Source of the DNA: Trichoplax adhaerens
Lineage: Eukaryota > Animalia > Placozoa
Assembly: GCF_000150275.1 (NCBI RefSeq)
Contig: NW_002060943.1
Coordinates: forward strand, 8,254,066 to 8,318,065
Direction: 5' to 3'
DNA: 64,000 nt
Shown: positions 1-23,483 of the stretch, one piece after another
Layout: each line of letters begins with the position of its first letter
How positions within the stretch are numbered: the first letter of the stretch is position 1
Notes under the pieces: model-generated
The model's input: the letters and a program-made list of their open reading frames with translations, nothing else
Told to the model about the DNA's origin: nothing
The model's database searches: none
Program-made: the position numbers and the translations under genes

Positions 1-3000
1 GATATGAATCATCCACCAATATTAGAAATGTTATTTCTGAATTCTTCAATAAAGAAGGCAAAAGAACTATGTATATCTATACACAAACAGCCGTTTTACC
101 AGCATCATTAAAGGCTTCGTTTCAACCTCCATCAGATCTAGAAGATAAATTAATTTTAATTCAAAAATGCCCTGAGACAGGAAAAGTATCAAAAGATAAC
201 ATTTCAGAAGAAATTTTCTATTGTGATTGCACTAAAAATCCTTTAGATCATTTAACCATGGTTTCACGTGAAGTCTATCTACCTATGCTATGCAATGAGC
301 ATTTTAACGCAACCTATGGCGATGATAAAGTGATTGATGCGTTACAAAAGTGTCTTAGCAGTTTTCAAATTACTCGCGGTCATGTTGATGTTAGTAATAA
401 TGTATATCTAGCGAATTAAATTAACTTGTATACTTCATTTTTAAAGCTTATTAAAATTTTGGGCAAAATTATTCCTACTTTAATATTTAATTTTACTATT
501 TTCAATGTAATGACTCCTTTTCCAATAGGGCCAAATTATTTTACCACTCCCGCCTATTGACATCCTGGCAGATGCAACAACTTATTCTAATCGTAGTGCT
601 GCAGTTATCCATTTACTAGAATCGGTCATGATTGGTTGGATTAAACAAATCAAAGTTGCTCTACGATTTGAACCTAGTCATGAAATTATGAAACTTTCTG
701 ATCATAATCGTCCCGGACCTTTAGCAGAAGTTGAAGTTAGTTTAACAAATTTATTCTTAATCGATGTGTTCACAATATTAATTAGCTCAAAATTAACTAT
801 TCCTATACATGATAGATTTGGACAGATCGTTACAAGCGTTTAAATCACATTATGGAGCAACTGGATCAGCCACTTGCAAGTGATATTTTAAATGATTTAG
901 AGAACGCAAATAGCACTTATTGGCATTCATTTCTTAGCGTTCGAAAAGATATCCTTAAAGTAAGTGTAGTTTAGGGTAAAAATTAAACTAACGTTATAAT
1001 ATATTGCTGACGTAATGTTCGTCTATGGTTTCACTAATGATATACCCAATTGGTTATGCTTTAAGTAATTCAATAACGATCTAGCCTACCCTAACTGAGT
1101 CTAAATACAGCTCATTCATAGCTTTATTTAAACTTTTTCTGATTATATGCAAAGTAAAATTAGACATGTAGATAACAGGTCTAGTACTTAAATTATTTTT
1201 TATCTTAAAATACTTAGGCACTCGCTGAAACACGATCAAACTTGGTCTATCTGAATACCATGGTACCTTGGTTTCAAAAATTACACGAAGCTTACGAATC
1301 TGATGCTATAGCTTCAGTTTTTCCACCACTTATTCATCTACTCTATTTGGTTTGGAGTAATTCTAAGTTAGTACACGTAACTATTTGTTAGTAGGAAAAT
1401 CAATAAAACATAATTAAAGTGATACCCTTGCAAGGATATTCAAAGTAACATATTCGACTAATAGAACCGCGTGAAATAATATTATTATTATTTTAAATGC
1501 TGTAGATACTACCATGGTGTCAGCCAATTCCATCGGTTACTATCTTTGATTGCTAACGAAGTTGTTAATCGAGCTCAAAAACTTGTAGGTAAAAGGATTC
1601 TTGAAGATACAGAAGAGGTAATAACGTTATCCAGTGGTAACAAGTCTTTTTATTTATTCTCATAGCCAGAATATGGATAAAGTATTGTGTACATATACAT
1701 GTATACTCGTATATCTATACATTTATTTTATTTTGTCATTTTACAAAAATTCTACTTTCACTTAATATCATTATAGTCGTACCTGAGGTTGAAAGATGCT
1801 CTCAGAGTATGCGCCCGATTTCGTGGCATTTACTTAGACAAAAAAGACAAAGCAGATTCTTTGAATAGGAGCAAAATGGCTGCTCTTTCTGATACAATGT
1901 ACGTAGAACATCAATAATATGATGAAAGTAGATGAATGAGTTTGCTATAGAAAGGACTTACTTATTAATCGTATTGTTTTAGGTACGGAACTGGAGTGGA
2001 AAAGCAAGGAGCTGGTGGTTTTGCTCAAATTTTACTTACCGGTGGAAATGGTGTCAATCATACTGAATCAGTAGCGCTTACAGCCGAATTAACTGACAAA
2101 AACTGGTCAGACTCACCATGGCCTGCAAGAAATAATTCAGCATTTGTCTCGCTAAATAGTTTTATGGAAAGATGCAATGACGCTCTTGAACTAGTTCAGA
2201 CTTCACAACATTTCCGTTGCTTAAAATCAGTTGTCGATGTTGGTGGTGCTGGTGGAAGTAGCTTGAATGCTCTAGTTGAAGAAATTCACATTAAATTTGT
2301 TGTTACAATGAAAGACTTCTTATCAGTAGTCACGGTAATATTCTAAATTATTAAAATTTTTCTTCTTTTTTATTACCTTATTGAAAGATTTTTTATTGCT
2401 TGTGCACCAATTAAAAATATTGTTAATTGTCACCGAATGGGTTCAATGTAGCGGTATAATTTTTAAACGTTAGATAGGAGTGTTTTAGTGGACTACTTAT
2501 TTTACAATAGAGGATAATTATAAATTTCATCATTGATATTAATCTACTGTATATATGTATACCAAGGATGTACTGGACATTGATGAAGGACAAAACTTTG
2601 AAAATGCCTTCTTTCATTTTAGATCCGTCGTTAGAGTAAGTCGTATTGCTAAGTCCTTTGAGTTATAAAATATGTTCAAGGAAATAAGAATTGCTCATTA
2701 AAATATTTGTATTCTGTATAATCTAGGATCTAGAATCTCGGCTAGCTAGCATTCTCGGCCAAACGTTGACAGTTTGCCCAACCATTGGAGCTAAGTTAAG
2801 ATTATTGGAAGTTTATGAAGGCATTAGTTGTAGAGATAATGTCAGGGTAAATTTTGCTTTGTCTTAAGCTTCAGGATAACCTTGTTTCCATTAAATCTTT
2901 AAAAATTAAAATTTTGAAATTGTTTTATCCTTCAGGCAAGCCTGAAGAGCATCATTAATGATCTCGTGCAGTCCATCATGGATGAATTGCTAAATGTAAG

Positions 3001-6000
3001 AAGTATGTTCGATTACTACAACGGTAACTCCCCTAGCCACGTTAATCTCCCACCAGTCACTGGTAAATTACTATGGCTTTATTCTATTCGAGCACGTATT
3101 CAGGTATGTATCAGTAATTTTGTTATTTCTAATGCTGATGCGGCTAACTTTTTCAAGCTTTTCTTCTAACACTTTCAAGGAACCGATGTCAAAAATGAGA
3201 CAAGTCAGTCCTGATTCCCTGGAAGATGACTTTGGCTGGCAAGTCAGGCATACATACAGCGACTTGATTAATGATATTTCGCGATGTGAAAGTGAAATTT
3301 TAAATAAATGGCAAAAAACTATTCAAGCAGACTTAAGAAATAAATTAAAAAAGCATTTATTGGTGAGTAGCTGCAAGTAAATTGGATGGGCATCAAGCTT
3401 GCTATTAATTACTTCATGTAGCCATAAAAAATTAAAATTATAAAGTGGTTAATTTCTAGCATATTGCTTTTTTTACTTGTTAGATATTTGTAACAGCGGA
3501 AGACGGTAATGGAAAGATCTTACAAGTTAATTTAGACCCCGGCTTACTACTACTTCTTCGCGAAATACAGTATATGTCTGCTCCACCACTCAATATTAAT
3601 TTGCCCGATAACGCCAGAACTCTTCTTCGTAGCACCGATGTTTACACGATCCGACAGATTGCAGATAGATTGGAAACAATCGCATCAAAGTATAATGCAA
3701 TAATGAAAAATATGAGCTATTTTGAACGACCACTTTTTCAAGAAAAGGTCGACAAGATTCATCTGGTAGGTCGTTTATAATTAATCTATTAATACATACA
3801 ACTTCCGTTACTAAGAGGACTAACTCAAACATGGATTGCAATTTCTAGCTATTACAATCTGGATTAGATAATTTAACCTGGAAGAGCGTCGAAGCTCCGG
3901 ATTTTATTGAAGCAATGACTAGTTTAATATGCTCCGACGTTCATCGTCATTTGTCAATTGTGCAATTGAATAGCCAAGAGATTAATAATGTTATTGCATC
4001 ATGGTCTACTAGTCAGCGACTTGATGTATTTTCCATCCGAAGTCTTGATCATTCGTACTCCATCGAGGAAGTACAACTTTCACATAGGTACTGATATCTT
4101 TCAATATCTCCATACTACTTTATTATTACGATACGGAAAGGGTAAATGGATTAACAGAGAGATAGATATTAAATTGGTGAAATAGGAATATTCAGTTATT
4201 TTTTAAACTTAACTAAAATTCTTTTTCTCTATTAGTTCATTACGGGAAGCGTACGAGGGAAATGTAATTCCTTCGGGACAGCGCATTCATACATTAGTCA
4301 AATCTTCCTTTGAAGTAAGTCATTAAAGTAGAGACCTCGATTATAGATTACATAGTTATTTATTAATAAAGTAAGGAATAATAAAGTACAATGTTTTGTA
4401 TACAACCCAAACATATTATGCACTATGTAACGTGGTTTTTTAACGCACAAATCGTTAAAATTACATTCTCTAGAATTTAAAATTGGCCTTGCGGCTAATT
4501 TAATATCAGCTCGTATAAAGGATATGACAGTGAATTTTTGAAATAATTCCATAATACTTACTGTGTAAAGGCCTAACGTAATTAATTTTGATTCATATTT
4601 AGCTTTGGAAATATATTGATTTCGTTACTAAGACCGCCTTCGACATAATACGATTTTTAAATTAAATTTCGTTAACTTTTTACAAAGTAAAAACTAGCCT
4701 AAGTACAGTATATAAATATACAGTAGCCTTTGTGTTTTTACACAAAGTGAATTGTTTTCAATGATTTTAATAGAATTGTCAAATAAGCCGCGCGTCTCCA
4801 GCTTGGAGCGATTATATTAATTATCTTGAAGACTTAGTCAAACGGGGCTTAAAAGAAGCCACTATGTCATCACTTCGATCCATGTACAATCAACTTACGG
4901 CTGAGGTTTGTAACTTACGCGTCTGTATAGCAAATACGGAAATGAAATTATATGAAAACAGATTTCTAATGTGATATCCACGCTAATTCCATTATTGTAT
5001 CCTGGATTTGTGAATGTAACTGAAATTTAGAACGCTGTTCCAGTGTTGACGATACGCCTGGAATTGATCGGGGAAGAAGTAACATTTACCCCTCCTTTAA
5101 CTAAAGATACTTCAATTCCAAGCATACAGGAAATTTCAACATCTTGGCTTGATAGCTACTTGAGAAGAGCATCATTAATAAAGTGCCTTAAAGATCCTGA
5201 TAAGGTAAGGGAATATAAGAGTTATGAGTGTTTAGTGCTATCAGTATTAGATTTGAATTAATAATGGAAGTAATAATGAAAATTTACCTTCGGTTATGCT
5301 TGTGAATGATTGTCGCTTAAGGATTAAACTCTTCTATCGAATTATGAGAAATTGAACTTCTTTGTAATTAGACCAATGGATATCGAGATGATATTGAAAA
5401 TGATCTAGAAATTATTGTAATTGTTGAAAAAATCAAAGACACTATTGAGGAAAGAATAGAAGAAGCTAAGGTTCTCCATTGCATTTATGCTAAATTTTTG
5501 ACTATCGATCTAATGATTGCAGTCAATTATCTTCTTACGAGCACTTCTATTTTAAAATATGCTAGAAATGTATCGCATGGTACAATGAATACTCTTTTTT
5601 ATGGACCCAAGATGTGCAACAATCTTTTCAAAGCTTTCTGAGAGGAAAAATTCAATCAATGCCTGAATCACCTACTGTATCACGTCCTAACTCTCGATAT
5701 GATAAATCCGTAACACATTCAGCCACGGTGTAAGCAGAAATCTATCAAATAAATCTTTTTGCCTTTTTCATAACATTCCCCTATTACCATATTTTGATAT
5801 TGTACAATTTGCTCCGTACAATATAGTGTCTTAGTACATTAACAGCTTGAGGAAAACATAAAGACTAAACTCGATTTAAAATGGTAACCTTAAGGGATTA
5901 TCTTATTCTTAATACAGGAGTAGCTATAATGAATCAACTGGTGCAAATTTGAGTATGGGCGACAAAATTGGACGTATTGAGAAATCGTTTCTGCAATCTA

Positions 6001-9000
6001 CTTTTAATAATGATAATCATATCGATAATTTGCCTTCGCTGGATGCATTTGATGTTGAGATAAATATTTACAAGGTAGAATTGCCTAAACTATTTATACG
6101 ATTACATTATATACTCTTGAAGTTAGATATACAAACAAACCATGAAGTAACAGTTATAGGATAATATAGTTAATATATACAGATTAAAGTTTTATCCGAT
6201 TTGCTTAATATAATTTTTTCATTTTTTTCATGCATCTTTTAGAAAGCACGAGATGAGATCAAATCTTTACCCAAGATTCGTGATGAAGGCTGGTTACGAA
6301 TTGACATGCATCCAATTCGACAAGTTTTAATTACATATGCAAGTAAATGGATGCATACATTCACTAAATACTTAAAAGATCAAGTTACAGCGATGCTAAA
6401 TGCATTAGATAGTTTTATAAGACGCGTTGAACCAGGTATCGAAGATATATCTGGTGATGAGAAGGATACGGCTGCTTTTATGAAATTGATGCGTATCTTT
6501 AATGAGGTTAGGGTCTCATCGTAATCGCATACTGTCAATGTTTTGTTATTAATACCTTATATATTGATATTATGAGTACTTAGACGACTATTAATGTAAG
6601 GATTGCAGTTGCCTATGTTACTAAGATAACAAATTCTGAAATTCTTTCCAAAAATTGAAGGTGAATGCTCAGCAGAACGAATATGATGCAAAATTTACTG
6701 TTATGCATAAAACTGTTAGACTATTAGAAAAATATGGCCAAAGTCTTCCCAATAAAACACAGAAATTCTTCGAAGCAGCACCAGGGAGGTGAGAAATTTT
6801 TGAAATTGATTACTGAAAGGATATCATATTTTATATTATTTATTTAAATATTATTTGTGTTATACGATTTATTACGTATTTTATTAATAATTTGTGGTCT
6901 CCTACTAATTTCAGATGGAATAACTTGAAAACAAAGGTTGCTTTAGCTAAACAGCGACTAGGCCCCAGAATCCAGGCATTATCGACTGAAGTTATTCAAG
7001 TAATCTTGCGAAATATTATTATTACATAATATTTGTAAAAGAAGACTCTAACAACATTCATCGGTATTGTGTGATAACGATCGTTACTATAAACTTATTT
7101 GTTACAGGATTTATCTGTTTTTGGTACCAGATGCGAGACTATATGCAATGAATTTGGAAGTTGTGAGGCTTTCGATTATAATTGCAATTCAGATAAGGTG
7201 GACACAGTACTGAACACATTCAGCCATGGTTTAGCAATTCTAGAAAGAGAGGCTTACGTAAGAGAGATAGTTTTGTAGTTGTATCAACTGAATTTCTGCG
7301 AATTACACCGTTGCAGACACAACTTATATAGTCCAATTATTTTATGTTAAAATGTTACTATGATACTTTAATTATATTTAGTTAGTTGATGTACTTATAC
7401 ATTATGGTCTCTCCTCTGGTTTTGGGATTTATGAAATTTCTGCTAAAATCCTTTACCGCCTCATTTAGCTTTATATAACGTGAAATAATTACTTATTCTG
7501 ACTGTTTCAGGATTTGCAAGAATTGCAGGAATTACTAGAAGTACGAGTGGTTGATTTTACAATTTTGCCCAAGTCAGTATAATTTAAGAAATGTAAAGTA
7601 AAATGATTCCAATAATATTTACTCTGTCAAATTTCTTGGACTTTGTTTATAACGTAATCGATCATCCATTATTTCCTTATTAGGTGTCGTAATGATATAT
7701 CTTGCCTTCAAAGTGTTTGGGAAACTATCAAGTAAGATTAATAAGGTATACATATGTAAGATGCAAATACCAAGTAAATAAAACTTGCGGGTTATTTTAC
7801 GTAGAGTAATTAAGGTTGAACATGACGAATGGAAGCATATGAAATGGGTAGATCTAGATATGGATGTGGTAATGTCAGCAACAGACAATCAGTTGGATCG
7901 TGTCTATGCTTTACCACCGGATTGCAGAAACTGGGATGTATATAATTCTCTACGCGAATCAATTTTAGAGATTCAGGTACTTGTTTCATAACTTTTTTAA
8001 TATAATTTTGGTACTGTTAAATTGATTGCATTTGTACCGATTCGTATCTAATATCGATTTAAAATGCTATTAGGCCTACATACCCATTATAGAAGATTTA
8101 AGTAGTTCATCGATGCGTACTAGACATTGGAAACAACTTATAAGAGTTATAGGAGGAAATATTCCTGTGGATAATAATGGCTTAACTAATTTATCTTTTA
8201 ATACCTTATTGAAATTGAATTTACAATGTAAGTCAACTAATTATTTCTCCAGTTCCGATTTTATTTATAGAAATTGACAATTTTACACTTTCGAATGTAT
8301 TATCATATTTTTAGCGCATATTGAAGATGTTCAATCAATCGTTTATCGAGCCAATAAAGATCTGGCAATAGAAAAAACACTTAAAACTTACGAAGAAGTT
8401 TGGCTAAGTAAAACATTCGATCTGATTCCTCATACCAAATTGCGACCAACAACATCTAGTGGACCCGATGTATGACGTCTAAGTTGTTATTTTAAAATGG
8501 GCACCAAATTTTATTTATTAATTTATTATTAAAAGAATATTTTGTGTTAAATCCCATTGTGCTTAAATTGTTCTTGAGAATGATTCCTAGTTGCTCACTA
8601 AGATAGAAAATCAAATAATTAATATCTTTGCATCCATGATTGTGATTATAAATATGTGAATATAAACACATTCTTCTTTTGACATCATACAATTAAGGTT
8701 GTTAGCGACGGTGATAACGAATCAGATGGCGGATTACAATATCAAAGGAATATCCCAAGTCGGACGTCAGCAACTACTTCTATCAGCAAAGGCAAGCATC
8801 GAAATTCGATTTCTTCACTACCCAATTCATTACAAAATATTCAGGTAGGTCTTGCAGTAACTGTAATTTCAATATTTATTTTGACGATATTAAATTGTGT
8901 TATGCAAAACTTAATTTAATATGCCTACTACGAATTGGTTCTGCTTAGGATACTGGCCAGCTGTACTTGCTAGCTGATTGTCAGCCAATATTTGAAGAAA

Positions 9001-12000
9001 TGGAGAGTCATCAGGTATTTCGTATATTACTAACACTAGCGAGCGTGTGCTATTGAAATTTTGTAGCAATATAACGTCTAATAAATGCTTTTTTATTTCG
9101 TATTTCTTTTCGCTAAACAATATAGACTTCTCTTCAAGTTATTCAAAATGGAACTGCCGCTAGTTCTTTTGCCGATGAAGTTACTAAATGGCAAAAATGT
9201 TTACAAACTATTGAAGCTGTGTTACGAGTATGGTTAGATGTGCAAGATAAATGGATAGAATTAGAAGAGGTTAAGTAACTGTAATATACCACAATTAATT
9301 GTACTCAATCATAGTTCCCTTACTGATATGTTGATAGACTTATCTATAATTGCTAAGGCAATCTTTTGGATGTTTAATAGATTTTTACAAACTCTGATGT
9401 TAAGTTCTCATTGGCGCATGACTGCAGTTTGTTCTTGGCAGTTAATCGAGATTTCAGATTGTTGATGAGAGCAACGGAGAAAAATCCAAATGTTTTACAA
9501 TCATGTTCTAGAAAAGGTAATTGCCTTACGATTCGTATAACTTGTGTATATTTAAATTTCTCTGTTTTGTTAAGATTAAATCTGAAAATAAAATTAACAG
9601 GAATACTGGTAACTCTTGAGAAAATGAATAAAGTTTTGGAGCAAAATCGCAGATCACTAATGCAGTTTATCATCAAAAGAAGAAGCAAATATCCTCGATT
9701 TTATTTCTTATCCGCTGAAGATGTGACACATATAATTTGTAGCGGTAAAGGAAGGATTTTTGTAGTGTATTTATAAATAGTAGCTAATGGAAATTTGCAT
9801 CATTTTAAATTGGGTGCTTTTTAAAGTACCATTATACATTTTCACCCCTTTGGTGTTTATCTTCTTAGGAAATAATGCCAAAAGAATCAATGAATATTTG
9901 TACAAACTATTTCCTAATATCGATTGCTTGGTGTTCGAGGAAGCAGTTAGTGAAGGACAGTTTTATTCAGTTATTACTTCTATTATTAGCAGTATGGGTG
10001 AACGTCTAGCATTAGATGAGGTATGCTCTTCGAAATATTGACTTTTAATTGATTTTGTAGTTAAAAAGTTTGCCGGATCATATTTTTTGTAAGATAAAAC
10101 TTAGAAAAAAATTTAATTTTTAGCCAACAGTATGTACTGGATCAGCGGAAACTTGGTTGCAATTATTAACCGACTTGATAACAAAAACACTAAAAATTCA
10201 GCTACAAAACGCTTTGCAAGTTTCTACGGAAAGACCTTCCATAGGTACTGACCGCGAGCAATTCAATCAAAATGACAATGTAGATAATAGCAACATTCCT
10301 AAATCATGGACCATTGAACAAATTTCAGAAATTGCACTATTAGCAACACAGGTAACACCTTAATTTTAAACTTCATTGTAAAGAGAATTTGCTTAATTTC
10401 AAAGTTGTAAAATGCCTCGTTCTTTGATACGAAAATATATCAAAGAACAAGGCATTTACAACCGTATATAATTAGCATGTTTCATAAATTGTTAATTACA
10501 CCGGCTACAGAGATAAAATGTATGCGGACATTATTATAGGAAGACAAAATATTAACAATTCCTTAATTTTGCACTACTTTAATAATTATACTGTCATATG
10601 ATTTTAGGTCGAATTGACGGCTATGATCGAGCAAAGTCTTCATGATATTGGTCAAAATAATCCTAATGCTTTGCAAGAAAGCTTAGAGGCTATAACAGCT
10701 AGCATTAATGCAGCAATTAAAATGCTTCATGGGTCAGAAAATGACCCATTTGAAATGGATGAAGCTGTCAAATCGGCAAGATTTACGCGGCGGTTGTATC
10801 GGCCACCACCTGACGATGGCGTTCATGATGCTCAAACATTCAATAATATGCAGTATAACTACAGAAGAGCATCGCAAACAATGTCTTATATGTCTCATCC
10901 TACCAGAGGTAAGCTGCAATGTACAATCGCTATTCGTGAATATCTTTTATATATTTTAAAAGTAGATACCGTAATTAAAGCCTTTACTCAATGTCTAATA
11001 TTATGATCCATATGTCTATTCCTATAACTGCTATTGATAATCATAACAATATATGATCTTTCCATACAAATTTCTAGTGCATTCAACTGATTATGGCCTT
11101 AGTATTGATGAAAATCTTGACGACGGTAAAATATTGTTATTACCAAGTCAAATTCAAAAAATTAGTAATCTGATCTTAATACTATGCTATCAGCGAGATG
11201 TCGTGCAGAATTTAATAACTGCAGTTAATAAGATGGAAAGAAAACATAAGGCTATGAACTTGTTTGAATGGTTAATGCAAATGAAATACTACTGGTTTGA
11301 TCAAGATCAAGAATGTGTGATTAAATCACTGGATGCAAAATTTGAGTACGGTTTTGAATATCAGGGGAGTTATACTCGCTGTGTTGTTAGTCCATTGACA
11401 GAACGTTGTTTCGTATGCTTAAATCAAGCCATTCACTATCACCTTGGTGGACTTTGTCTAGGTCCTGCTGGTTGTGGTAAAAAGGAGACAATTAGCCAAT
11501 TAACTATTATGCTTGGTAAACCATTTTATAACTTCAATTGCACCTATGCAATTAATCATAACTTGATGGTAGATATATTTAAAGGCATGGCAGGTACTGG
11601 TGCTTGGATATGTCTAAATAATATCGATAATTTAGATGTACACATTCTATCCTTAGCATCTCAGCTTTTGTCAGCTATTTTTTATGCTTTGAAAACAAGA
11701 GAAGAATTTATCACGATTGAGAACGAGACAATCCACTTAGTTCCAACAGCAGCTTGCTTATCAATTTTAGTCGATAATCCTAAGGCTAACTATAATAAAT
11801 TGTCTTTACGCACTGGCTACTTCCCCAGCTCAACATCGTCAACAGCGGCGCTACCTAAGTGCTTATTGGACCTCTTTAGGCCTGTAACTTTGGTTAATCC
11901 GGATATTAAACAAATTACGGAAGTTTTATTGACTACGCATGGTTTCAATTATGCACCGCAGTTAACAAAGCAGTTGTTAGCTTTCAAAAACTTGACTGAG

Positions 12001-15000
12001 GATTTCCTTCATATGCCTGCAATGATTAAAGATACCGCTACATATGAAATTTCGAAACCTTTGTGCACTTGGAACCTCTATACAATTAAGTCAATTATAG
12101 CTGACGCAGGAATTCAATTGGATAATATATTATCATCATTATTACAAACAAAACAAAGCGAAGCTATATCAATTAGTAGTAAGTATTGTAACTAGCACTA
12201 TTTCAGCTATCAGCACCAGGAAACTAAAAAGGCGTTAATTTATATTTAATAAATTTATATACCTTCGAGGCTAGTTGCAAGAGCTACATTAATAAAACTA
12301 AGCCATACTTTGAGTAGACTTACTGATAATATAATCTATATTTTTCATAATCGTAGGTCGAGTAAGTGATGAAATTGAAAGCGCAAAGTCTATTAATTTA
12401 ATTGGTACGATGACAGAAGATGAACAGCGAAAAGCTGAAGAGGAAGCACTTGTAATTGCCATTAGAAATAACTTTGTGCCCCGTTTAGTAGAGAAAGATG
12501 GTAGCCTGTTCGCGATGATACTTACAGATATCTTTCCTGCAGTAGATGTTCCAATCATTGTCGATAGTAAAGTACCAACAACAACACGAAATTTATCAAC
12601 AGTTCTTTCAACTCGCAGTCGTAGCATGCCTCTTGTGGTACAAGCTGAAGATCTCCATGATAATGTCATCAGAACTACTAATCAATCTTTAATTTTAGAC
12701 GAAATTTCGGAAGCTATAGCAGTTTCTCTTTCTAAAAAATACCTTCAACCCGGTCCTATTTTCACTTCACGTGTATTACAATTAGCCCAGTTAGTTTCAA
12801 TTCATCGATATATCTTATTGGTTGGGCCATCTGGTTGTGGTAAATCGAAAAGTATCCAAACATTATCAGGTGCCTATTCTGAAATGGGTAGAACAGTTAA
12901 TTTACAACCCATCAATGTACGCTCAATAGCAAGGACGGCTTTTTTCGGACAATTCGATAGTATTACTGAAGCATGGAAAGATGGCGTGTTTCCATTAGTA
13001 CTTCGTAAACATATGCATTCAACTGATCCTAATAGATCGTTGCAATCAAAGAAAGCGCCCATGCAGTGGTTGCAAATGGATGGTGAAGTAGATACAGTTG
13101 AAATAGAAAATTTGACATCGGTCTTTTCAAGTGATGCAACTCTTGTCCTAGCAAACAATGAAAGAGTTAAAATGCCAGATTCGATGCGTGTATTTTGGGA
13201 AATGGAACATCTACTGCATTTAAGTCCGGCTACAATGGCTTCAGTAGGTGTTTTATGTATGTCAGAAGATGATGTTACTTGGGAACTACTTATTGAAAAC
13301 TGGCTATTGCAACGACCAGCAGCTATTCGTGGTTTACTTGAACAACTTTGTAACAAGTACATTAAATCAACGTTAAATTACATTAAAACTGGTTTCGATG
13401 AAGCTGAAAGCTTACCACAAGTACCATTAAAATATGTTGTGCCTATGAAGGATGCTAACATGATTGACACATTATGCTCATTAATGGAAATATTAACTGG
13501 TGATTCAGTTGATTTGAATGCAATTGCATATGAACATTATTTCAACTTTTCGTGTATCTGGGCCTTTGGTGGAACATTAATTGAAATTCATCGAGAATGC
13601 TTTAATCGATTTTGGAGAAATAAGTGGGATATTAAATTGCCACCTGAAGGTGAAGTGTGGGACTATTATGTGAGTAATGATACTGATGCATTCGAATTCT
13701 TAAGTTGGTACGAAACAGTTCCACAGTACGTCAAGCCTGTCAATAGAGGAATTCCATCAGACGCTTTCGTACCCACTGTTGATACCGAACGATTAAATTT
13801 CTTAATAGCAACATTATGCGATGCCGGTAAATCGGTTCTTTTAGTTGGTGAAGCAGGTTGTGGTAAAACTGCCTTAGTGAAGGAAAGATTAAGATCAGAT
13901 AGCGGTAATATGGCTGAAGTATTAACCTTAACTGTACACTGTAATAAGTTTACGACATCTGAGGTCTTATGGAAGCAATTAGACAGTTGTCTCGAATGGA
14001 AATCGGGTAAAATATACGTACCTAAAAGAAATAAGAGTCTGCTATGCTTAGTTGATGATCTTAATACGTCGAAAACTGATAATATTAGAAGTCAATCTGC
14101 CTGTGAACTATTACGGCAACATATTGATTATGGTGGTATTTGTGACCCTGTAACACTCGACTGGCGCATAATTAATAATGTTACCTATATTGTGACTTAT
14201 AATCCCGATGCTATAAGCACTAAACCAAAGCTAACACCGCGACTATTGCGCCATTTTGCTACTATCTATTATCCGCATCCAAAATCAGAAGAATTGCACA
14301 CGATTTATTCTGGTTTACTTTATGCTCACTTTTTAAGTAATCTGCAAAACTCAACACAACAGTCTTACGCTATCAATGACAGCCAATTAAATAGGCAACA
14401 AGAAACTGACCAAATTTTACGTTCGATATTATCATCTATCGTTAATGTTACAATAGAAGTACAGAATAAAATGCGAACAATGTTTCTACGAACTTCAAGC
14501 CGTTGTCATTATTTATTTACTATGAGAGATCTAACTTTAATCTTCAGAAATTTATGCCTTTCGTTAGGCCCCGGCTGTCCGTCTCGTGACTTACTGCTAT
14601 TGTGGAAACATGAATGTTATTGGATTTATGCTCATCGATTAGTTTCTGAGGTAGACGAAGAAAGATACAACCAAGCTTTTATTACAGCAGCACGTAAAGA
14701 GTTCTCTAAGGAAGATCAACTTAATCTTGCCTTATCTCCAATTCCTGTATTTACTAACTTAGTGGAGCGTGATGATGTATCCATAGTAACAGTAGCTACT
14801 CGATTATCGTCTGATCAAAGTGGTGGCAGCAATAGCGGTAATAATAATGAGGAAAGTAATTGGGGCGATTTCTATCATCCATGTAATGATATCCCTGGTA
14901 TTAGAGCATTACTCCGGCATGGCTTAGATGAATACAACAAAAACAACCCAAGAATTGATCTTACATTTTATGATGGTGTTGTTACCCAGGTTTGTCGCTT

Positions 15001-18000
15001 AGTTAGAATCTTACAGTCACCACACGAATGTGGCCATGCTCTCATGGTTGGGGCAGGATGTTCAGGTATTGCATCACTTGTAGCACGACTTGCAGCATAT
15101 TTGTGCACATTTATAGTTTATCAAATCAATCCATCTTGCATGTTAATGGGCGGAAAATACGATGTAGCTACCTTCAAGGATGATTTGGTAGAAGCTTATA
15201 CAAATGCAGGCGTAAAAGGAGAGAAAATTATGCTATTATTAATGGAATCAGAGTTATTAAGCAATGATTTCTTAGTCTATATTAGTGAATATCTAGTCTC
15301 TGGTTCTATTACTCATTTATTTACAATAGAACAATATACTAGCATTATTAATGCAATTCGTACCGAAGTTACCCAGGCTGGATTGCATTATTCGCCTGAT
15401 GTTGCTTGGCAATTTTTTCTGCAAAAAATTCGACGTAATTTACATGTTGTCATCATTATTCCATCGATTGGTTCTCGTTTAAGGACAATATGTAATGAAT
15501 TCCCTTCCTTAATCAATAATATTGCATTTATGTGGTATGGGCATTGGTCACGTGAGAAGTTAGTATGCAATGCGATGCATCATTTAAAAAATATTAAACA
15601 GTTGACTACCAAAGATCAAGAAAATTTAGCTCACCTAATGGCATCGATGCATCTATCAATTCGTCATCATGATGATAGTGTTTATGATGGCGGTACATAT
15701 GGTCATATTACAAATTATACTTTCGAAAAGTTTGTTGAACGATTCTGTGACATGACCGCTAAACGATTCTCTGATATTTCGAAGGAAAAGTCTAAAATTG
15801 AGGCTGCATTAGATAAGATTACTACGGTATCGAAATTGGCTGCTGAGCTGAAATTGCAACTTGATCATGAACTGGTGGTTCTGGAAGAAAGGAAAGATGG
15901 CGCTAGTAAACTTTTATTTCAGATTGGTCAAGATACCGCTATATCTGAAGAACAAGCTAAATTAGTACAAAAGCAACACAATAAAATCCAGCAATTGAAA
16001 AAGAATTTACCCGAATATCAGGTAGCATTTGAGAAAGCTGAGTTTAAAGCCAGGGCTATTGTGACTGAAACAAAAAAACTACTTAACGACGTTGATACAA
16101 CGAGTTTAAGTGAGTTAAGAGCACTACAAAAACCTGAACCAGAAGTAGAGGATTTATTGGCAGCCGTAATAATGATTGTCAAAACTCCAGCATCAGACTT
16201 GACGTGGAGTAAAGGTGCTAAGCGATTAATGGCTAATCTTGATCGATTTTTAGGTGAGTTGTCCACGTTTAATGAAAGTGAATTACCAGAGAGTACTCTT
16301 GCCTTATTGGAACCATACTTAAGAAAACCTTACTTTACGCCCGATCATTATGATAAAATTGGGTTGCCCGCGGCAAGTTCTTTGTGCATGTGGGTTCGTA
16401 GTGTTGTGCGCTATCATCGTATGATGCATCATAAAGTTTTACCATTAGAATTGAAAGTGAAAAATACCGCTGCAGCTGTTAATTTAGCAACTGATCGCCT
16501 TAATAGCATGGAATCAAAAGTAGCTGTATTTACTGAGAGATTAGCTGGCCTTGGAAAAGGTTTTGAGGAAGCTTCCATAGATAAAATTGAACAATTACAG
16601 TATACAACTAGTTTAAGTAAGCAGTTGGAAAAAGCGGAATACTTCCTATCTGTCTTGCATGAACAAAAGATAAATTGGGAACAAGACTTAAGTATTATTA
16701 AAGCATGTCAAGAAAATATTGTAGGTGGCATTATTACGGCTACTGCTTCTGCCTGTTATCTTGGACCTTTAGATCCATTATTCCGGCAAGATATGTTAAT
16801 GGTTCACTGGCCACAATGTTTAAAAGAACGAGGTATACCTTTAGTTATTGACGGAATTGAGTACCATGAAGGTTATATAGTAAGATGGGCTATTGACAAA
16901 CTAAACTTACAAAATGAGCTCCTTCCAACAATAGATCGTTCAAAATCATACCAAGAATCAAAGAATTTTATTGAGATATCGTCTGATACTGATGATAATG
17001 TGAATAGCGTAACTATACCCCATGATTTACAAATCGATCCAAAAAATTTACCAGATAGAACAAGTTATACTGAATTTTGTCGATTTCTTGCGTCTTTGCT
17101 TGTTGGTGATGAGAAACTTCGTAAATGGCTCACGAAAGGTTTTGGTATGAATAAATTGGCTCTTGGTGCTATTATGGCATCGTCTTGGCAACGAACCCCG
17201 CTCTTTATCGATCCACATGGGCAAGCGGAAACTATAATTCGGGATTTGGAGAGCCCAAACGATTTAGTTGTGGTCGATATGGGACTAGCGTAAGTTATCC
17301 TTAGTATCGCGTTGAAAGCGTAGATTTGAAATAATTATTAAATATAAACGTAGCTTACATATTTAAACATAAGCCGTAATATATTTTGCTATATTTGCGA
17401 TATATTTTAGCAATCTTATGTCTCTTCATCACATCGAGAAAGCAATAATTGCTGGGAAATCCGTTTTGTGTACTAATATTGGAGAAACAATCGATTCAAT
17501 GCTAATGCCATTAATCAATCACCATAGAAATATTGTTACCGATCAATCTGGTAAACTAATTTAATTCGTTTAATACTAATTATAAGTAAGGATTATAGAA
17601 TTATGCAGTTAAGAGTAATGAAGTAAATTGAGTGTTATTAACCAATAGAGTGGAAACAGTGATATAGCAGAGGAATCAACATACGAATATGTTTACAAAG
17701 TTATAATTTATTGGTTGATTAAAATCATGTATGTGATTCATTTTCTATTTATTGATAGGTCAAAGAGTGGTCAAATTCAACAATCGCTACATCTTATGTC
17801 ATAAAATGTTCAGATTATACTTATCAACCAGCCTAGCCAAGCCTAATTTTAGCACTGAAGTTGCCTCTTTAGTGACTTTGATAAATTATACAACGTCAAG
17901 AGAAGGCCTCGAAGAAATACTCATACAAAGAATATTTGAACATATTCAGCCGACCCTTAACAAAGAATGGCGTTTAACATTAAGTGTTGGTGAACAATTA

Positions 18001-21000
18001 ATCGAATTTTTGCACAATCTCAATGAAAAATTGTTTGCGAGATTGATTAACAAGGAAGGCGTACATATATGGGATGAGATAAGCTATATAGCTGATGCTG
18101 TTGTTTGTAAGCGAAAAGTTACCCATAATCTTTATAATGCAATGCAACTATCACTTCAAATACGAAGTATTCGAGAAGACATGCATACTTTAGCATCTCA
18201 ATCGGCATCTATTTTAACTATCATTGATTTATTATCGCATTTACATCATGAGTACCGTTATTCACTGCCTCAGTTGTTAGAGGTATTCGATATTGCATTA
18301 CCACAACATGAAATTGATGAAAAAGTTATTGTTACAGTTAGTAGTTCGGCGCAAGAATCATCAACTGAAGGTGAAGACAACATAAAAACTTATAAATACT
18401 TCAAATTACCTAATATACCAACATTGCCAACACCTGGAGTAAAATACGAGCGATTGGAGAGTAGCTTGATGCGTGAATTTAAAACTTATCTTTCGCAATC
18501 TGTTTTTGATAATATTAGTCGCGGTATTTACGAGAATCACCGAATTATACTAGCAACAATGTTGTGTCTGCAATTAGAAAGTGATTATACAGACATAATT
18601 AATTCTGAACATATGCAATTCCTATTATATGGTGCAGTGTTGAAGGATAAACCCGTTACTGAAAAGCGCAAGCCTGATTGGTTACCTGATATCAAGTGGG
18701 CATCACTTATTGCTTTCTCAGAGTTATCTCCTCAAGCTCGCGATATATTTGAAGATTTCAACGAACATCATGAGTTGTGGTGTAAGTGGTACGAAAGTAG
18801 TAATCCAGAAATTATGCCCATTGGTAGTGACAAAATAAGGAATTGTAGAACAGATAAAACGATATCTTCAGAACAGGATTTTATGCGTATACTTTTACTC
18901 AGGTGTTTACGTGAAGATCGAGTTGTTAATGGTTTTGCCAGTTATCTACGTGAACATATTAATATTAAACCAACTTTAAATAATGTTCCACCACTTCATG
19001 AAATAATTGGAGAATTAAATCCTTATCAGCCAGTTTTAATTCTGATGCCAGCTGTCGATGATATCACACATATGTTTAAGTCTTCAGTGACGATGGCATC
19101 AGATTCCGTTGTAAAGCGAATAAAGATGACTAGCAAGGTTGGAAAAGGAATATACCCGTATATAATTTTTCATCATAAGTATAACTAATCATAATATCAC
19201 TAAATAGACGATTCATATTAATTGATTATATACAAATACAATTTACTTTAACAAATATTAGTACCTGGGAATTCCATGTAGCGTCATGCCATTAAACGAA
19301 GAACATGAAGACGAAATTGCAAAATTGATATATCGTGAGCAAAATTGGCTCATTATTGAAGATATTCATATGGCAAAAACTAGCTGGTTGCGAAATTTAA
19401 CAAAGATTCTCGCTAAGAGGCAGAATGCAAAAGGTAGGTTAAAAACATCCAATTTTTTATAAAGAATAACGCGCGATAATTACTATTTAAAATGAAAATA
19501 AAAGTACCGCCAAAGAATAGTTGGGAGTACAGTTTTAATGAATTTTAGTATAATTGATCCAAGTTATGTTATCGTCAACAATATTTATCACATTTTTTTT
19601 ACAGATGGCAATTTTAGACTCTTTATGACTACTCAACCAAGTCAATCGCTTCCTATTTCCTTGCTTCGCTCTTGTTATAAATTGGCATGGGATGTTGTTA
19701 TCACAGATGAGAAACAAAATGATGATAACATAAATTACGAGTTGATTGACGAAGATCTCAGAGATTCTATTATAGCTTCACTTAAATCTGTAGTAACTAT
19801 GAAAAGCGTAGCAAATAAACAACATCCACAAGTCATGTATAGACTGATTTATGGAATGTGCCTTATACATAGTTTGCTGATATCGAGACAATTATTTGGC
19901 ACAAGAGCTATGAATTATTGGTATCCTTTTACTAAAGTCCACTTACGAATGGCGATTGAACTAGCTCTTCTGGAAGCCAATGATATCGAAAGTTCGCTAG
20001 ATGAAATAGCCAGACTGATAAAAGAAGCTGTTTATGGAGAATACATTTGCGATTTGACAGATCGTCGATATCTGCGAACGCTAATCTATAAGATATTGCC
20101 TGCTACAGTAACTCAAGATAACTATGTTGTTCTTGGACGCGTTCAGTTTCAGCTACCACCTCATAACATGCATATTAATGAGTACCTAAATTGGTTTAAG
20201 AAAGAAGGTAACGTTGGTGGCACAACTCATGCGTTATCACTTGATAAGTTTGTCTTGGAAGAATACGATAAAGCCAGGTAGTTATTTGACATTAATGCAT
20301 AAAAGAGCAAATTTAGAAATGTATTCGTAATGCAGTGTTTTAATTTATCATTTTTTTGCAGGCAACTTACCTTTATTGATGAATTGGACAAAATATACAA
20401 ACAATTTGCTTTATCACAAAATACGATATGGAAAAAAGAAATAAATCTATTTGGAGAAGACATTGACCTAGAACACATCCAACAAGCAATCGATTTAGCT
20501 AATGAACAGTTGCCGACATTATTACCAATAGATAATACCACCAATACCAGACCATCATCGAGGTATTCTGATTCTATGCGAAGTAGCTCGAATGTTGTAT
20601 CTAGGGCGACATCCGCTAGATCATCTCGAAATGGAAATGCTGTATCAGTATTCGATACCGTTGATTATGCACTGCACCAGGTACATTCTATAAAATTGTT
20701 TTACTACATAGCGTTGTTTCTAAAGTATTACTTATGACAGCTATCATTATTTAAATTTTGACAACCATTGTTTTTCCTGGTCAATTTAGGAATGTATTGA
20801 ATTTAACGCCCTACTACGTGATGTTAAACGTTCATTAAATATTATTGAGAAGCAATTGGTTGGCGGCAAATTTTCGATTCCCGATAGTTCTATTAAAGTT
20901 ATCAACTCCTTGCAAAATGGTTCAGTCCCAGATTTATGGATTCACTCAAACTATATTCCTACCACTCACACTTTGCGATCTTGGCTTACAGGTATTAAAA

Positions 21001-21972
21001 AGAAATGTGAATGTTATGCTTAGTAATGAAATATTTATATTATCCACTATTGTGTAATAATAATAGCAATTCTTGCCGTTGCATACAGATCTTACAGCAA
21101 GGCACAAACAGTTGCTTAAATTGATCAATGAGGGCATCATTCAAAAATCCAGACAAGACGTAGCTGTTTATGCAGCTGAACGCTTACGTTCAATTTGGAT
21201 CGGCGGTTTATTTAACCCCAAAGCTCTTACTACGGCATTGATGCATGAAAAAGCCATACAGGAAAATCTTTTATTTGACGACGTAAGACAATCTGAAATA
21301 TACGTTGCGGAAAATCTCAATATTACAGCATGAATATACATCAGTGTATATTATGACGACTATGGCTCACGTTTTATTTTATTTTTAATAGATCACCATT
21401 GTATGTGAGGTTCATAATTCGAATAATCTTCCTGCGCCTGAGTTGATACCAGAAGGTGGATTATTCTTAACTAATTTATGGCTTGAGGGAGCTCGGTGGA
21501 ACTTCGAAACTGGATTATTAGATGATGCAGTGTAAGTACGCGTATAAATCCATAAACTAAACTATTATTCAAAGTGCCAATATAGAGGTATGCATCATTA
21601 GTAAACAACGATTATTTTATACCATTTAATAGGAGTCCGTTATTTAAAATGCCTCCTATTTGGATCACGCTTGAACGCAAGAGTGACAAAAGTAATCAGG
21701 ATGAATCGACGGATATGTTATACGAATGCCCAGTGTATATTAATCAGGTCAGTTAGGGGACATAATAATGTAACTAGGACATTTCCATAGCAGGTAGTAA
21801 TTATTCTTTTACTTATTACTTGTTGCAGGCTCATTCGAGCTATCTGTGGAGCCTTCCATTACGATGTACCGCACCATCATCACAGTGGATTTTAGCTGGA
21901 GTATCGATGATATTGGATTCGGGTTATTTTAAGTATATAATGCATAAAGCAGCACGAGAAAATAGACAATAA
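1..21972 (+). CDS. Divergent axonemal dynein heavy chain, outer-arm beta-like (DNAH9/11/17-type tail and C-terminus); 5' end outside the window; ~48 exons, ~5,100 aa within the window
   Basis: Exons joined by hand at GT-AG junctions stay in frame at every junction checked. Tail motifs GQIILPLP..VIHLLESVMIGWIKQIK (529-735); linker DEVTKWQKCL..WLDVQDKWIELEE (9126-9269) and YPRFYFLS (~9690); AAA1 in exon 11078-12178; AAA2-AAA4, stalk and microtubule-binding domain in exon 12357-17289; AAA5/6 in 17411-20277; C-terminal LWLEGARW, YECPVY and WILAGVSMIL; stop TAA 21970-21972. Confidence 0.93.
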
Positions 21973-22538: not shown

Positions 22539-22857
22539 TTCATCGTTGCTTAATGCTCATTCAAGCTTATGCGTTTAATTTTGAAGAAATGCAATTGTCG
22601 AAACTGATGACAGTACATTCATCGTTGCTTAATGCTCATTCAAGCTTATTGCGTTTAATTTTGAAGAAATGCAATTGTCGAAACTGATGGCAGTACATTC
22701 ATCGTTGCTTAATGCTCATTCAAGCTTATTGCGTTTAATTTTGAAGAAATGCAATTGTCGAAACTGATGGCAGTACATTCATCGTTGCTTAATGCTCATT
22801 CAAGCTTATTGCGTTTAATTTTGAAGAAATGCAATTGTCGAAACTGATGACAGTACA
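22539..22857. repeat. Tandem repeat, 80-bp unit x4, near-identical copies
   Basis: Unit TTCATCGTTGCTTAATGCTCATTCAAGCTTATTGCGTTTAATTTTGAAGAAATGCAATTGTCGAAACTGATG(G/A)CAGTACA starts at 22539, 22618, 22698 and 22778. Confidence 0.95.
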
Positions 22858-23483
22858 CAACATCTGTGTAAAACAGATATCAGAACAGAAGGCCTTTCAT
22901 TCAGTGTAGCGTAAAGACTTTTGCGACATCTATTTTACACATTTTGTAGAGCAATAACCACCGTATGATATGGCGACAACTCCGCTATTACAGTAGTAGA
23001 AGTGTCTAAGCTTAGACCTGACAGTGTAGGTATGGCCGTTCTGCCGATACGCTACAGTGCATTACGGTACAGTACGGTACTGGAAATGTACTGTACTTGC
23101 AGCATACTATAAGCGCATAGCTACCGGTACACATAATCAGCGTTGATAACACACTATGTGGTACGCTACCATTTCAAATGATAGTCAAGAATCGTCCAGT
23201 ACTGTACAGTACTGTGTACAATGTACTGTGGATATTACGCATGAGCTGCTCCATCGTTGACCAACGACTAACCGGAACATCGTGGCGGAACTTGCAGGTT
23301 GGTGAGCAAAGACGATGTGCAATAATATTAAGGGATATTAATCCAGTCATTCAGTACAGTAGTGCTATTGAGGATAGAGAAGTAATCTGGAATCTTTGCT
23401 GTATCTATGTGTAGTAGATTGAGTTGTACTTGGAATTTGTATCGCTTACGTGTTCAATCTTGAATTAGCTCGTTGCATGTACA

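What the first reader, a model, noticed from the sequence alone, without database searches (positions are those of the whole stretch)
11461..13249. Candidate pseudo-motor: full-length, frame-intact dynein whose primary ATPase site AAA1 has lost its key catalytic residues
Seen versus the axonemal dynein consensus: Walker A GPAGTGKTE -> GPAGCGKKE (11461-11487, Mg-binding Thr->Lys); Walker B GAWGCFDEFNR -> GAWICLNNIDN (~11600-11631, both acidic residues lost); sensor I region ITMNPGYAGR disrupted by an insertion; sensor II WGLRAIKSVL -> WNLYTIKSII (12070-12099, Arg->Tyr); AAA2-donated arginine finger PATVSRAG -> PATMASVG (13226-13249). Established: AAA1 hydrolysis drives the dynein power stroke, and Walker A/B mutations there abolish motility. 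Four separate lesions converge on one active site while ~5,100 codons stay open, which points to selection for a non-motor function (static cross-linker, brake or ciliary scaffold) rather than decay. The long outer-arm-type tail suggests it may be distinct from the known degenerate DNHD1 lineage, but that needs a tree.
Basis: partly seen in the sequence, partly recalled or inferred. Interest (0 to 1): 0.88.

Follow-up and report, generated by a model that had tools for sequence, protein, structure and literature searches.

The report
Second "dead-engine" outer-arm dynein family
This is an intact, expressed placozoan gene for a giant dynein whose main ATP-burning site is disabled in every animal that has it. 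Its microtubule-binding stalk is fully conserved. It belongs to a catalogued but unstudied family (Kollmar's class 13), distinct from the DNAHX and DNHD1 "non-motile" dyneins.

Summary
The gene is full length, spliced in RNA and under purifying selection.

The genome is Trichoplax adhaerens. The gene is not DNHD1 and not DNAHX. I recovered the published DNAHX protein (XP_041462850). It falls in a different clade with DNAH8, and that clade has its own Trichoplax gene on another scaffold.

The window gene belongs to a separate clade next to the outer-arm beta chains (DNAH9/11/17). That clade has:
- a beta-type tail;
- an extended AAA5-to-C-terminal region;
- a low-complexity C-terminal extension in bilaterians.

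These are the features of Kollmar's (2016) class 13, whose ATP sites were never analysed.

Across the family, from placozoan to amphibians:
- AAA1 has lost the Walker B acidic pair and the sensor II arginine, and carries a 17-21-residue insertion at sensor I;
- the AAA4 P-loop is gone;
- the AAA2 and AAA3 motifs are kept;
- stalk plus MTBD keep canonical length and near-canonical conservation.

Best reading: a non-AAA1 pseudo-motor that still binds microtubules within a two-headed complex. An untested idea is that it is the unidentified partner of DNAHX in "dynein-X".

The parts
9..10354 (+). Tail and linker exons. About 38 conserved coding blocks; the first coding exon lies 327-431 nt upstream of the window.
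   Evidence: Collinear tblastn blocks against seven family members. DHC_N2 by Pfam at 9381-10038. Spliced RNA exons 9379-9516, 9599-9744, 9868-10020 and 10122-10351. Upstream exon found.
10608..10908 (+). Linker exon immediately before AAA1.
   Evidence: Present in the spliced RNA contigs of runs X5, X9 and X4, flanked by GT..AG introns.
11078..12178 (+). AAA1 large-domain exon.
   Evidence: Pfam AAA_6 positions 1-204, 170 bits. Exon ends fixed by RNA joints.
11461..11487 (+). AAA1 Walker A. The glycine-rich loop and Lys are kept; Thr is replaced by Lys.
11599..11631 (+). AAA1 Walker B strand. Asp-Glu is replaced by Asn-Asn.
   Evidence: The acidic pair is lost in all 20 metazoan family members aligned.
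11764..11883 (+). AAA1 sensor I region carrying a family-specific insertion of about 21 residues.
12070..12099 (+). AAA1 sensor II. Arg is replaced by Tyr.
12357..17290 (+). One 1,644-codon exon covering the AAA1 small domain, AAA2, AAA3, AAA4, the stalk and MTBD, and the start of AAA5.
   Evidence: Pfam AAA_6 tail, Dynein_AAA_lid, AAA_7, AAA_lid_1, AAA_8, MT and AAA_9. The RNA joint fixes the start at 12357.
13226..13249 (+). AAA2 segment that normally donates the arginine finger to AAA1. The Arg is absent.
13757..14711 (+). AAA3 with Walker A, Walker B, sensor I Asn and Arg motifs retained.
   Evidence: Pfam AAA_7 at 156 bits. Family alignment.
14954..15751 (+). AAA4 with its P-loop lost (no Gly-Lys-Ser/Thr). 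The small domain has canonical length (106 residues).
15794..16810 (+). Stalk coiled coil and microtubule-binding domain, of canonical length.
   Evidence: Pfam MT positions 2-340 of 344, 122 bits. Length 336 residues against 336 in DNAH17 and 537 in DNAHX.
17433..21969 (+). AAA5, AAA6 and C-terminal domain exons. Stop codon at 21967-21969, with no long C-terminal extension.
   Evidence: Pfam AAA_9, Dynein_heavy and AAA_lid_11. Collinear blocks. Terminal reading frame.

Best explanation
The gene is the Trichoplax adhaerens member of Kollmar's class-13 dynein heavy chains. This is an old offshoot of the outer-arm beta chain lineage (DNAH9/11/17).

Shown here:
- AAA1 lacks the Walker B acidic pair, the sensor II arginine and, in many members, the P-loop Thr or Lys and the AAA2 arginine finger.
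- The AAA4 P-loop is lost.
- AAA2 keeps its P-loop. AAA3 keeps its Walker A, Walker B, sensor and arginine motifs.
- Tail, stalk and MTBD are conserved.

Inferred:
- The protein cannot run the AAA1-driven power-stroke cycle.
- It works as a non-motor head that still binds the neighbouring microtubule through a normal stalk. AAA3 is the only site left that could switch its state.
- It is anchored by a beta-type tail in a two-headed, outer-arm-like complex.

Speculative (about one chance in three): its partner is the gamma-type pseudo-motor DNAHX, which would make class 13 the unidentified second heavy chain of 'dynein-X'.
For: Identity of the gene:
- The best relatives are 5.2-6.1-thousand-residue proteins of amphibians, non-teleost fishes, amphioxus, echinoderms, molluscs, an annelid, a nemertean and corals. 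A wide score gap separates them from the next hits, which are canonical DNAH17, DNAH9 and DNAH11.
- Among solved structures the best matches are DNAH17, Chlamydomonas beta and DNAH9.
- Trees place the gene in this family with 99 support, next to the beta clade, with 99 for the joint split.
- A profile built from family tails scores beta tails at 330-712 bits, DNAH8 at 155-265 and DNAHX at 155-190.
- The AAA5-to-C-terminal region is about 870-920 residues against 760 in DNAH17. Bilaterian members carry a Ser/Glu/Asp-rich C-terminal extension of 120-720 residues. Both match Kollmar's description of class 13 (PMC5100056).

Dead AAA1 across the family.

Where the constraint lies: within-family identity relative to canonical beta chains is 0.50 for AAA1, 0.85-1.13 for AAA3, 0.81 for AAA4 and 0.97 for the MTBD.

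A live gene:
- Spliced RNA contigs come from two studies, one of them 14.2 kb long.
- Strain differences split 10 synonymous to 5 non-synonymous over about 852 and 3,087 sites, a ratio of about 0.14.

Partner idea:
- Kollmar proposed a class-12/class-13 heterodimer on the basis of the tails.
- Chai et al. saw DNAHX paired with an unidentified chain that has a normal stalk and no AAA4 small-domain insertion. Class 13 has exactly those two properties.
- Both families were found in 40 shared genera and in no amniote, teleost or arthropod.
Against: - No biochemistry exists for any member. Loss of catalysis is inferred from motifs alone.
- This gene, and the corals, keep the P-loop Lys, and this gene keeps the sensor I Asn. 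Nucleotide binding at AAA1 is therefore not excluded.
- Intact AAA3 motifs could support some ATP-dependent cycle.
- Kollmar called class 13 metazoan-only, yet an ichthyosporean protein groups at its base here. The limits of the family are not settled.
- The partner idea rests on circumstantial fit. Chai's mass spectrometry names no such chain and the authors favoured an inner-arm dynein. Co-distribution is confounded by shared ancestry and by capped hit lists. The complex prediction could not be run.
Confidence: 0.8

Rival explanations
1. It is the placozoan member of DNAHX, the non-motile dynein described from sea urchin sperm.
For: The phenotype on paper is the same: a very long chain, an outer-arm-type tail and a degenerate AAA1. 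The taxonomic range is the same. The preprint says a placozoan orthologue exists.
Against: - The published protein, XP_041462850, was recovered. It matches the four published residues.
- It lies in another clade with DNAH8 at 100 support. That clade contains a different Trichoplax gene, TRIADDRAFT_56463 on scaffold C1410.
- Forcing the two families into one clade costs 79 log-likelihood units, p-AU 0.0002.
- The window gene lacks the AAA4 small-domain insertion: 106 residues against 146-162.
- It lacks the stalk and MTBD insertions: 336 residues against 537.
- DNAHX keeps its Walker B acidic pair.
Confidence: 0.01
2. It belongs to the DNHD1 (class 11) orphan lineage.
For: DNHD1 also lacks the AAA1 Walker B catalytic residues. 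No DNHD1 sequence could be put in my trees.
Against: - A search with a salamander family member returned no protein named DNHD1 among 120 hits, down to 234 bits. It did return bird DNAH17 and other canonical chains.
- Mammals have DNHD1, but no mammalian protein appeared among the family hits.
- Both the tail and the motor are specifically beta-like.
- Kollmar separates classes 11 and 13.
- The genome holds a third degenerate, class-less heavy chain on scaffold C1412 that fits an orphan better.
Confidence: 0.03
3. It is still a working motor. Either AAA1 hydrolyses ATP with non-canonical residues, or AAA3 has taken over as the driving site.
For: In this gene the P-loop Lys and the sensor I Asn survive. 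The AAA3 motifs are intact and as conserved as in canonical chains. The stalk, MTBD and linker are kept.
Against: - The Walker B Glu is absent in every metazoan member.
- Echinoderm members have also lost the P-loop Lys.
- The sensor II and finger arginines are mostly gone.
- AAA1 is the least constrained module of the motor.
- From established knowledge of cytoplasmic dynein mutants, AAA3 hydrolysis modulates movement but does not drive it.
Confidence: 0.1
4. It is a decaying gene, a 'ghost' pseudogene that merely happens to be open.
For: Four or five lesions fall in the site that matters most for a motor.
Against: - The same lesions are shared by orthologues across animals.
- Identity to the coral orthologue is 44% over 1,700 residues.
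- The first exon is conserved.
- RNA from two studies is spliced.
- Strain differences show a synonymous excess.
Confidence: 0.02

Closest known systems
Class-13 dynein heavy chains (DHC13) of Kollmar 2016, PMC5100056
   Same: The tail resembles the outer-arm class-4 (beta) tail. The AAA5 region is longer than usual. Bilaterian members carry a low-complexity C-terminal extension. The family is restricted to animals and is bona fide open in many species.
   Different: That paper states that it did not analyse the ATP hydrolysis or microtubule-binding sites. The family-wide dead AAA1, the lost AAA4 P-loop and the conserved MTBD are therefore not in it. The placozoan and coral members lack the C-terminal extension. 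An ichthyosporean protein groups at the base of the family here.
DNAHX (probably Kollmar's class 12), Chai et al. 2025 preprint, PMC11785096
   Same: It is a very long outer-arm-derived heavy chain with a non-catalytic AAA1. It has the same broad distribution: sponge or placozoan up to amphibians, absent from amniotes. It is probably non-motile.
   Different: DNAHX derives from the gamma lineage (DNAH5/8). It keeps the Walker B acidic pair. [quoted passage not shown] The window gene derives from the beta lineage, has lost Walker B, has a canonical stalk and MTBD, and has no AAA4 small-domain insertion.
DNHD1 (class 11, the 'orphan' or 'ghost' dynein)
   Same: It is a divergent heavy chain whose AAA1 lacks the catalytic Walker B residues, yet it is functional in sperm flagella according to the papers cited.
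   Different: DNHD1 is present in mammals, where this family is absent. It has no specific affinity to the outer-arm beta chains. It was not compared directly here because no DNHD1 sequence could be fetched.
Canonical outer-arm beta heavy chains (DNAH9, DNAH11, DNAH17; Chlamydomonas beta)
   Same: These are the closest canonical relatives in both motor and tail. They share the stalk and MTBD length, the AAA2 P-loop and the AAA3 motifs.
   Different: The canonical chains have a fully conserved AAA1 (82% identity among the three compared) and an AAA4 P-loop, and are about 4,450 residues long.

Membership tests
Dynein heavy chain | Linker, six AAA modules, stalk with MTBD and a C-terminal domain, in that order | tested here: met
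   Pfam finds DHC_N2, AAA_6, the lid, AAA_7, AAA_8, MT, AAA_9, Dynein_heavy and AAA_lid_11 along the exons. The gene is collinear with full-length orthologues.
Class 13 (Kollmar 2016) | N-terminal tail similar to that of class 4 (outer-arm beta) | tested here: met
   The family-tail profile scores beta-clade tails at 330-712 bits. DNAH2 scores about 325, DNAH8 155-265 and DNAHX 155-190. Single-headed inner-arm chains score nothing.
Class 13 (Kollmar 2016) | Longer AAA5 domain | tested here: met
   The stretch that is 760 residues in DNAH17 is 868-921 residues in family members. In this gene about 370 residues follow the AAA_9 match without any Pfam hit. The boundaries of AAA5 itself were not mapped.
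Class 13 (Kollmar 2016) | Unique low-complexity C-terminal extension | tested here: inconclusive
   The extension is present in all bilaterian members examined (119-723 residues, rich in Ser, Glu, Asp and Lys). It is absent from the corals and from this gene, which ends about 17 residues after the canonical C-terminus.
Class 13 (Kollmar 2016) | Groups with Kollmar's own class-13 sequences in a tree | not testable with these tools
   His sequence set (CyMoBase) could not be fetched. The assignment rests on his written description.
DNAHX | Clade with XP_041462850, sister to DNAH5/8 | tested here: not met
   Trees. AU test p 0.0002.
DNAHX | [quoted passage not shown] | tested here: not met
   The AAA4 small domain is 106 residues here and in the whole family. 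It is 107 in DNAH17 and 162 and 146 in the sea urchin and Trichoplax DNAHX.
DNAHX | Insertions in the stalk coiled coil and the MTBD | tested here: not met
   Stalk plus MTBD is 336 residues here, 336 in DNAH17 and 537 in DNAHX.
DNHD1 (class 11) | Groups with vertebrate DNHD1 | not tested
   No DNHD1 sequence was obtained. The only evidence is indirect: no DNHD1 among the 120 best hits of a vertebrate family member, and a specific beta affinity.
Non-motile (pseudo-motor) dynein, by function | No ATP hydrolysis at AAA1 and no motility | not testable with these tools
   Only the motif losses are shown.

The most novel reading that the evidence does not exclude
Class 13 is the missing second heavy chain of dynein-X. 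On this reading, animals from placozoans to amphibians build a two-headed, outer-arm-like complex from two pseudo-motors. One is beta-derived and still grips the microtubule through a normal stalk. The other is gamma-derived (DNAHX) with a crippled stalk. The two genes were lost together in amniotes, teleosts and arthropods.
Probability: 0.33. Interest if true: 0.8.

Novelty: new member of a known kind. Interest (0 to 1): 0.58.

Why it matters
Dynein is defined by its AAA1-driven power stroke. A whole family has kept about 5,300 codons for more than half a billion years with AAA1 switched off and the microtubule-binding stalk untouched. That shows the dynein scaffold has a conserved job that is not motility.

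With DNAHX and DNHD1, this makes three separate pseudo-motor lineages in one small placozoan genome. It also gives a concrete candidate for the unidentified partner in dynein-X. That can be checked with existing sea urchin mass-spectrometry and cryo-EM data.

The family as such is already catalogued, so the advance is functional annotation and a testable hypothesis, not a new kind of protein.

Tried and rejected
- **Complex prediction.** I asked for the N-terminal 480 residues of the Owenia class-13 and DNAHX chains. The tool was busy and was then withdrawn. Nothing was folded, so there is no evidence either way.
- **AU test under the site-mixture model.** On 58 rows it did not finish. A 29-row LG+G4 test was used instead. 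The groups were named after seeing the first tree.
- **Classifying the tail by plain tblastn.** Canonical chains gave only scattered weak hits. A family profile was needed.
- **Early lead that this family is DNAHX.** The sea urchin member has Val after the P-loop Lys and a Lys 172 residues further on, which looked like the published DNAHX residues. It was dropped once the real DNAHX sequence was found.
- **Atlas search** for the third divergent locus: the machine was busy.
- **Mixed alignment for folding AAA1.** An alignment of the AAA1 exon with full-length proteins smeared the exon's last 70 residues. No structure was predicted.
- **Spliced model.** It was searched exon by exon, by reference.
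- **DNHD1.** No sequence could be obtained, so it is absent from the trees.
Full report
**What is in the window**

The window is AT-rich eukaryotic DNA, about 32% G+C. It carries one very large gene on the + strand. Its exons give Pfam matches in the order expected for a dynein heavy chain: DHC_N2, AAA_6, lid, AAA_7, AAA_8, MT, AAA_9, Dynein_heavy and AAA_lid_11.

The genome has 105.6 Mb in 1,414 pieces and about 17 heavy-chain loci. One of them is identical to Trichoplax adhaerens TRIADDRAFT_56463, which lies on a scaffold of 8,573,113 nt, the same length as piece C1410. The organism is therefore Trichoplax adhaerens.

**Checking the observation**

- P-loop: Lys replaces the Mg-binding Thr.
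- Walker B: Asn-Asn replaces Asp-Glu.
- Sensor II: Tyr replaces Arg.
- AAA2 finger segment: the Arg is absent.
- Sensor I: the Asn-Pro survives but is followed by a roughly 21-residue insertion.

The AAA_6 match scores 170 bits here, against 480-536 bits for the canonical paralogues of the same genome.

The gene is complete.
- Fifty-one stop-free blocks are collinear with a 5,313-residue coral orthologue from residue 35 to 5297.
- The conserved first exon, with its start Met, lies 327-431 nt upstream of the window.
- The reading frame ends at 21969, about 17 residues after the canonical dynein C-terminus.

**Is it alive?**

RNA contigs from two studies hold 87-96% of the sampled words of the AAA1-to-stalk region. 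Laid on 9300-15200, three of them skip six introns, all GT..AG and all in frame. One contig is 14.2 kb long. A fourth run, unspliced, behaves like genomic DNA.

Fifteen coding differences between these contigs and the window split 10 synonymous to 5 non-synonymous. With about 852 synonymous and 3,087 non-synonymous sites, the ratio is about 0.14. These are contigs, not reads, so expression levels cannot be compared.

**Which family?**

A search of 1.8 billion representatives with 1,200 residues of the large exon found a small group of hits at 37-43% identity. These are 5.2-5.9-thousand-residue proteins of a salamander, gar, lungfish and bichir. Ordinary outer-arm beta chains followed at about 31-33%.

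Searches seeded with the salamander and sea urchin members extended the family to:
- frogs, sturgeon and amphioxus;
- starfish, crinoids and a hemichordate;
- gastropods, bivalves, a brachiopod, an annelid and a nemertean;
- corals, jellyfish and a tunicate.

A wide score gap separates these from the next hits, bird DNAH17.

Against solved structures, the AAA1 exon is about equally far from every dynein class. The 1,644-residue exon, however, prefers DNAH17, Chlamydomonas beta and DNAH9 (559-571 bits) over DNAH6 (473) and DNAH5 (366).

**Not DNAHX**

A 2025 preprint (PMC11785096) describes DNAHX, a non-motile heavy chain from sea urchin sperm, and mentions a placozoan orthologue. This had to be tested directly.
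- A second long, divergent family appeared at the bottom. It has a full-length Trichoplax gene on C1410.
- Searching with a gastropod member returned the 5,272-residue Lytechinus protein. Its accession is XP_041462850.1.
- That protein carries Val2221, Ser2322, Thr2324 and Lys2393, exactly as published.
- That family's closest solved relatives are DNAH5 and the gamma chains. The first 700 residues of its large exon, the AAA4 and stalk part, match nothing.

In a FastTree of 117 rows and an IQ-TREE site-mixture tree of 58 rows:
- DNAHX plus DNAH8 form a clade at 100 support;
- the window gene sits in the other family at 99, sister to the coral sequence;
- that family lies beside the beta clade, with 99 for the joint split.

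Forcing the two long families into one clade costs 79 log-likelihood units, p-AU 0.0002.

The two structural hallmarks of DNAHX are also missing.
- The AAA4 small domain is 106 residues here, against 146-162 in DNAHX.
- Stalk plus MTBD is 336 residues here, against 537 in DNAHX.

**It fits Kollmar's class 13**

Kollmar (2016, PMC5100056) defined three animal classes beyond the canonical nine.
- Class 11 is DNHD1.
- Class 12 has a gamma-like tail and an aberrant stalk.
- Class 13 has a beta-like tail, a longer AAA5 and a low-complexity C-terminal extension.

The window gene's family matches class 13 as follows.
- A profile of its tails scores beta tails at 330-712 bits, DNAH8 at 155-265 and DNAHX at 155-190.
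- The AAA5-to-C-terminus stretch is about 110-160 residues longer than in DNAH17.
- Bilaterian members carry 119-723 extra C-terminal residues rich in Ser, Glu and Asp.
- The corals and Trichoplax lack that extension, so this one feature is not met by this particular gene.

I could not fetch Kollmar's sequences, so the assignment rests on his description.

An ichthyosporean protein (Chromosphaera) groups at the base of the family. It shares the tail (895 bits) but keeps sensor II and lacks the sensor I insertion. The family may therefore be older than animals.

DNHD1 could not be placed in the tree. The evidence against it is indirect. The genome also has a third degenerate heavy chain, on C1412, that belongs to no solved class.

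**What is conserved and what is not**

Across 20 metazoan members:
- the Walker B acidic pair of AAA1 is always lost, and the first position is usually Asn;
- the residue after the P-loop Lys is almost never Thr, and in echinoderms the Lys itself is gone;
- sensor I carries a 17-21-residue insertion;
- the sensor II Arg survives only in one sea urchin;
- the AAA2 finger Arg is lost in about two thirds of members;
- the AAA4 P-loop is gone in all;
- the AAA2 P-loop and the AAA3 Walker A, Walker B, sensor Asn and Arg are kept in all.

Kollmar states that he did not analyse the ATP sites. I found no paper that does so for this class.

Within-family identity, as a ratio to the same measure among three canonical beta chains, runs as follows:

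| Region | Ratio |
|---|---|
| AAA1 large domain | 0.50 |
| AAA1 small domain | 0.44 |
| AAA2 | 0.64 |
| AAA4 | 0.81 |
| AAA3 | 0.85-1.13 |
| Stalk | 0.85-0.92 |
| MTBD | 0.97 |

The N-terminal 700 residues are 47-50% identical between coral and bilaterians. Selection therefore acts on the tail, AAA3, AAA4, stalk and MTBD, and has let go of AAA1.

**How it probably works**

Shown: the catalytic residues of AAA1 are absent, the stalk and MTBD are canonical, and the tail is of the dimerising beta type.

Inferred from established dynein mechanism, in which AAA1 hydrolysis drives linker remodelling and microtubule release and AAA3 only gates it:
- the protein cannot step;
- it should bind the adjacent microtubule as a static or AAA3-modulated tether within a two-headed complex.

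The partner is unknown. Several observations point to DNAHX.
- Kollmar proposed a class-12/class-13 heterodimer.
- Chai et al. saw DNAHX dimerised with an unidentified chain that has a normal stalk and lacks the AAA4 small-domain insertion. Class 13 has both properties.
- The two families were recovered from 40 shared genera and from no amniote, teleost or arthropod.
- Chai's mass spectrometry lists a minor 'DNAH9' (3.18%) beside the main beta chain. Kollmar's table gives sea urchins a single canonical beta gene. That minor chain could be the class-13 protein, but this is my guess.

I put the partner idea at about one in three. The prediction tool that might have tested tail pairing was not available.

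**Verdict**

The gene family is catalogued and the concept of a non-motile dynein is published. The new content is that class 13 as a whole is an AAA1-dead, AAA4-dead, MTBD-intact lineage distinct from DNAHX and DNHD1, together with a concrete candidate for the dynein-X partner.

Noticed in passing
G000:C1410:3495103-3517729 (loci L031, L035, L032): The true placozoan DNAHX gene (TRIADDRAFT_56463, 5,245 residues) is full length and collinear with a gastropod DNAHX. It has a 1,856-codon exon, and its AAA4 and stalk part matches no solved dynein.
   Followed up: yes
G000:C1412, about 333-346 kb (L038:4244-7207 and neighbouring loci): This is a third AAA1-degenerate heavy chain in the same genome. 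Ala follows the P-loop Lys, the Walker B acidic pair is lost, and a roughly 110-residue insertion precedes sensor I. It is equally distant from all solved dynein classes. It may be a class-11 or DNHD1-like orphan.
   Followed up: partly
Protein P0006 (Chromosphaera perkinsii, 4,745 residues): An ichthyosporean heavy chain groups at the base of the class-13 clade and shares its tail. It has lost Walker B but keeps sensor II and has no sensor I insertion. This suggests that AAA1 was dismantled stepwise, starting before animals arose.
   Followed up: partly
Protein P0141 (toad protein named DNAH8): A protein annotated as canonical DNAH8 shows altered AAA1 motifs: a changed glycine-rich loop, and Ser and His in the sensor I segment. 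Some 'canonical' gamma chains of amphibians may also be drifting.
   Followed up: no
window 28323-29747, minus strand: A neighbouring gene encodes a DPAGT1-type GlcNAc-1-phosphate transferase (Pfam Glycos_transf_4 and DPAGT1_ins). It is unrelated to the dynein.
   Followed up: no
window 35537-35872, minus strand: An open frame carries the C-terminal BUD22 domain, at 36.9 bits just under Pfam's cut-off of 37.
   Followed up: no
window 22630-22910: Three near-identical copies of a roughly 44-codon open frame follow the dynein 3' end. This is a short tandem repeat in the intergenic region.
   Followed up: no
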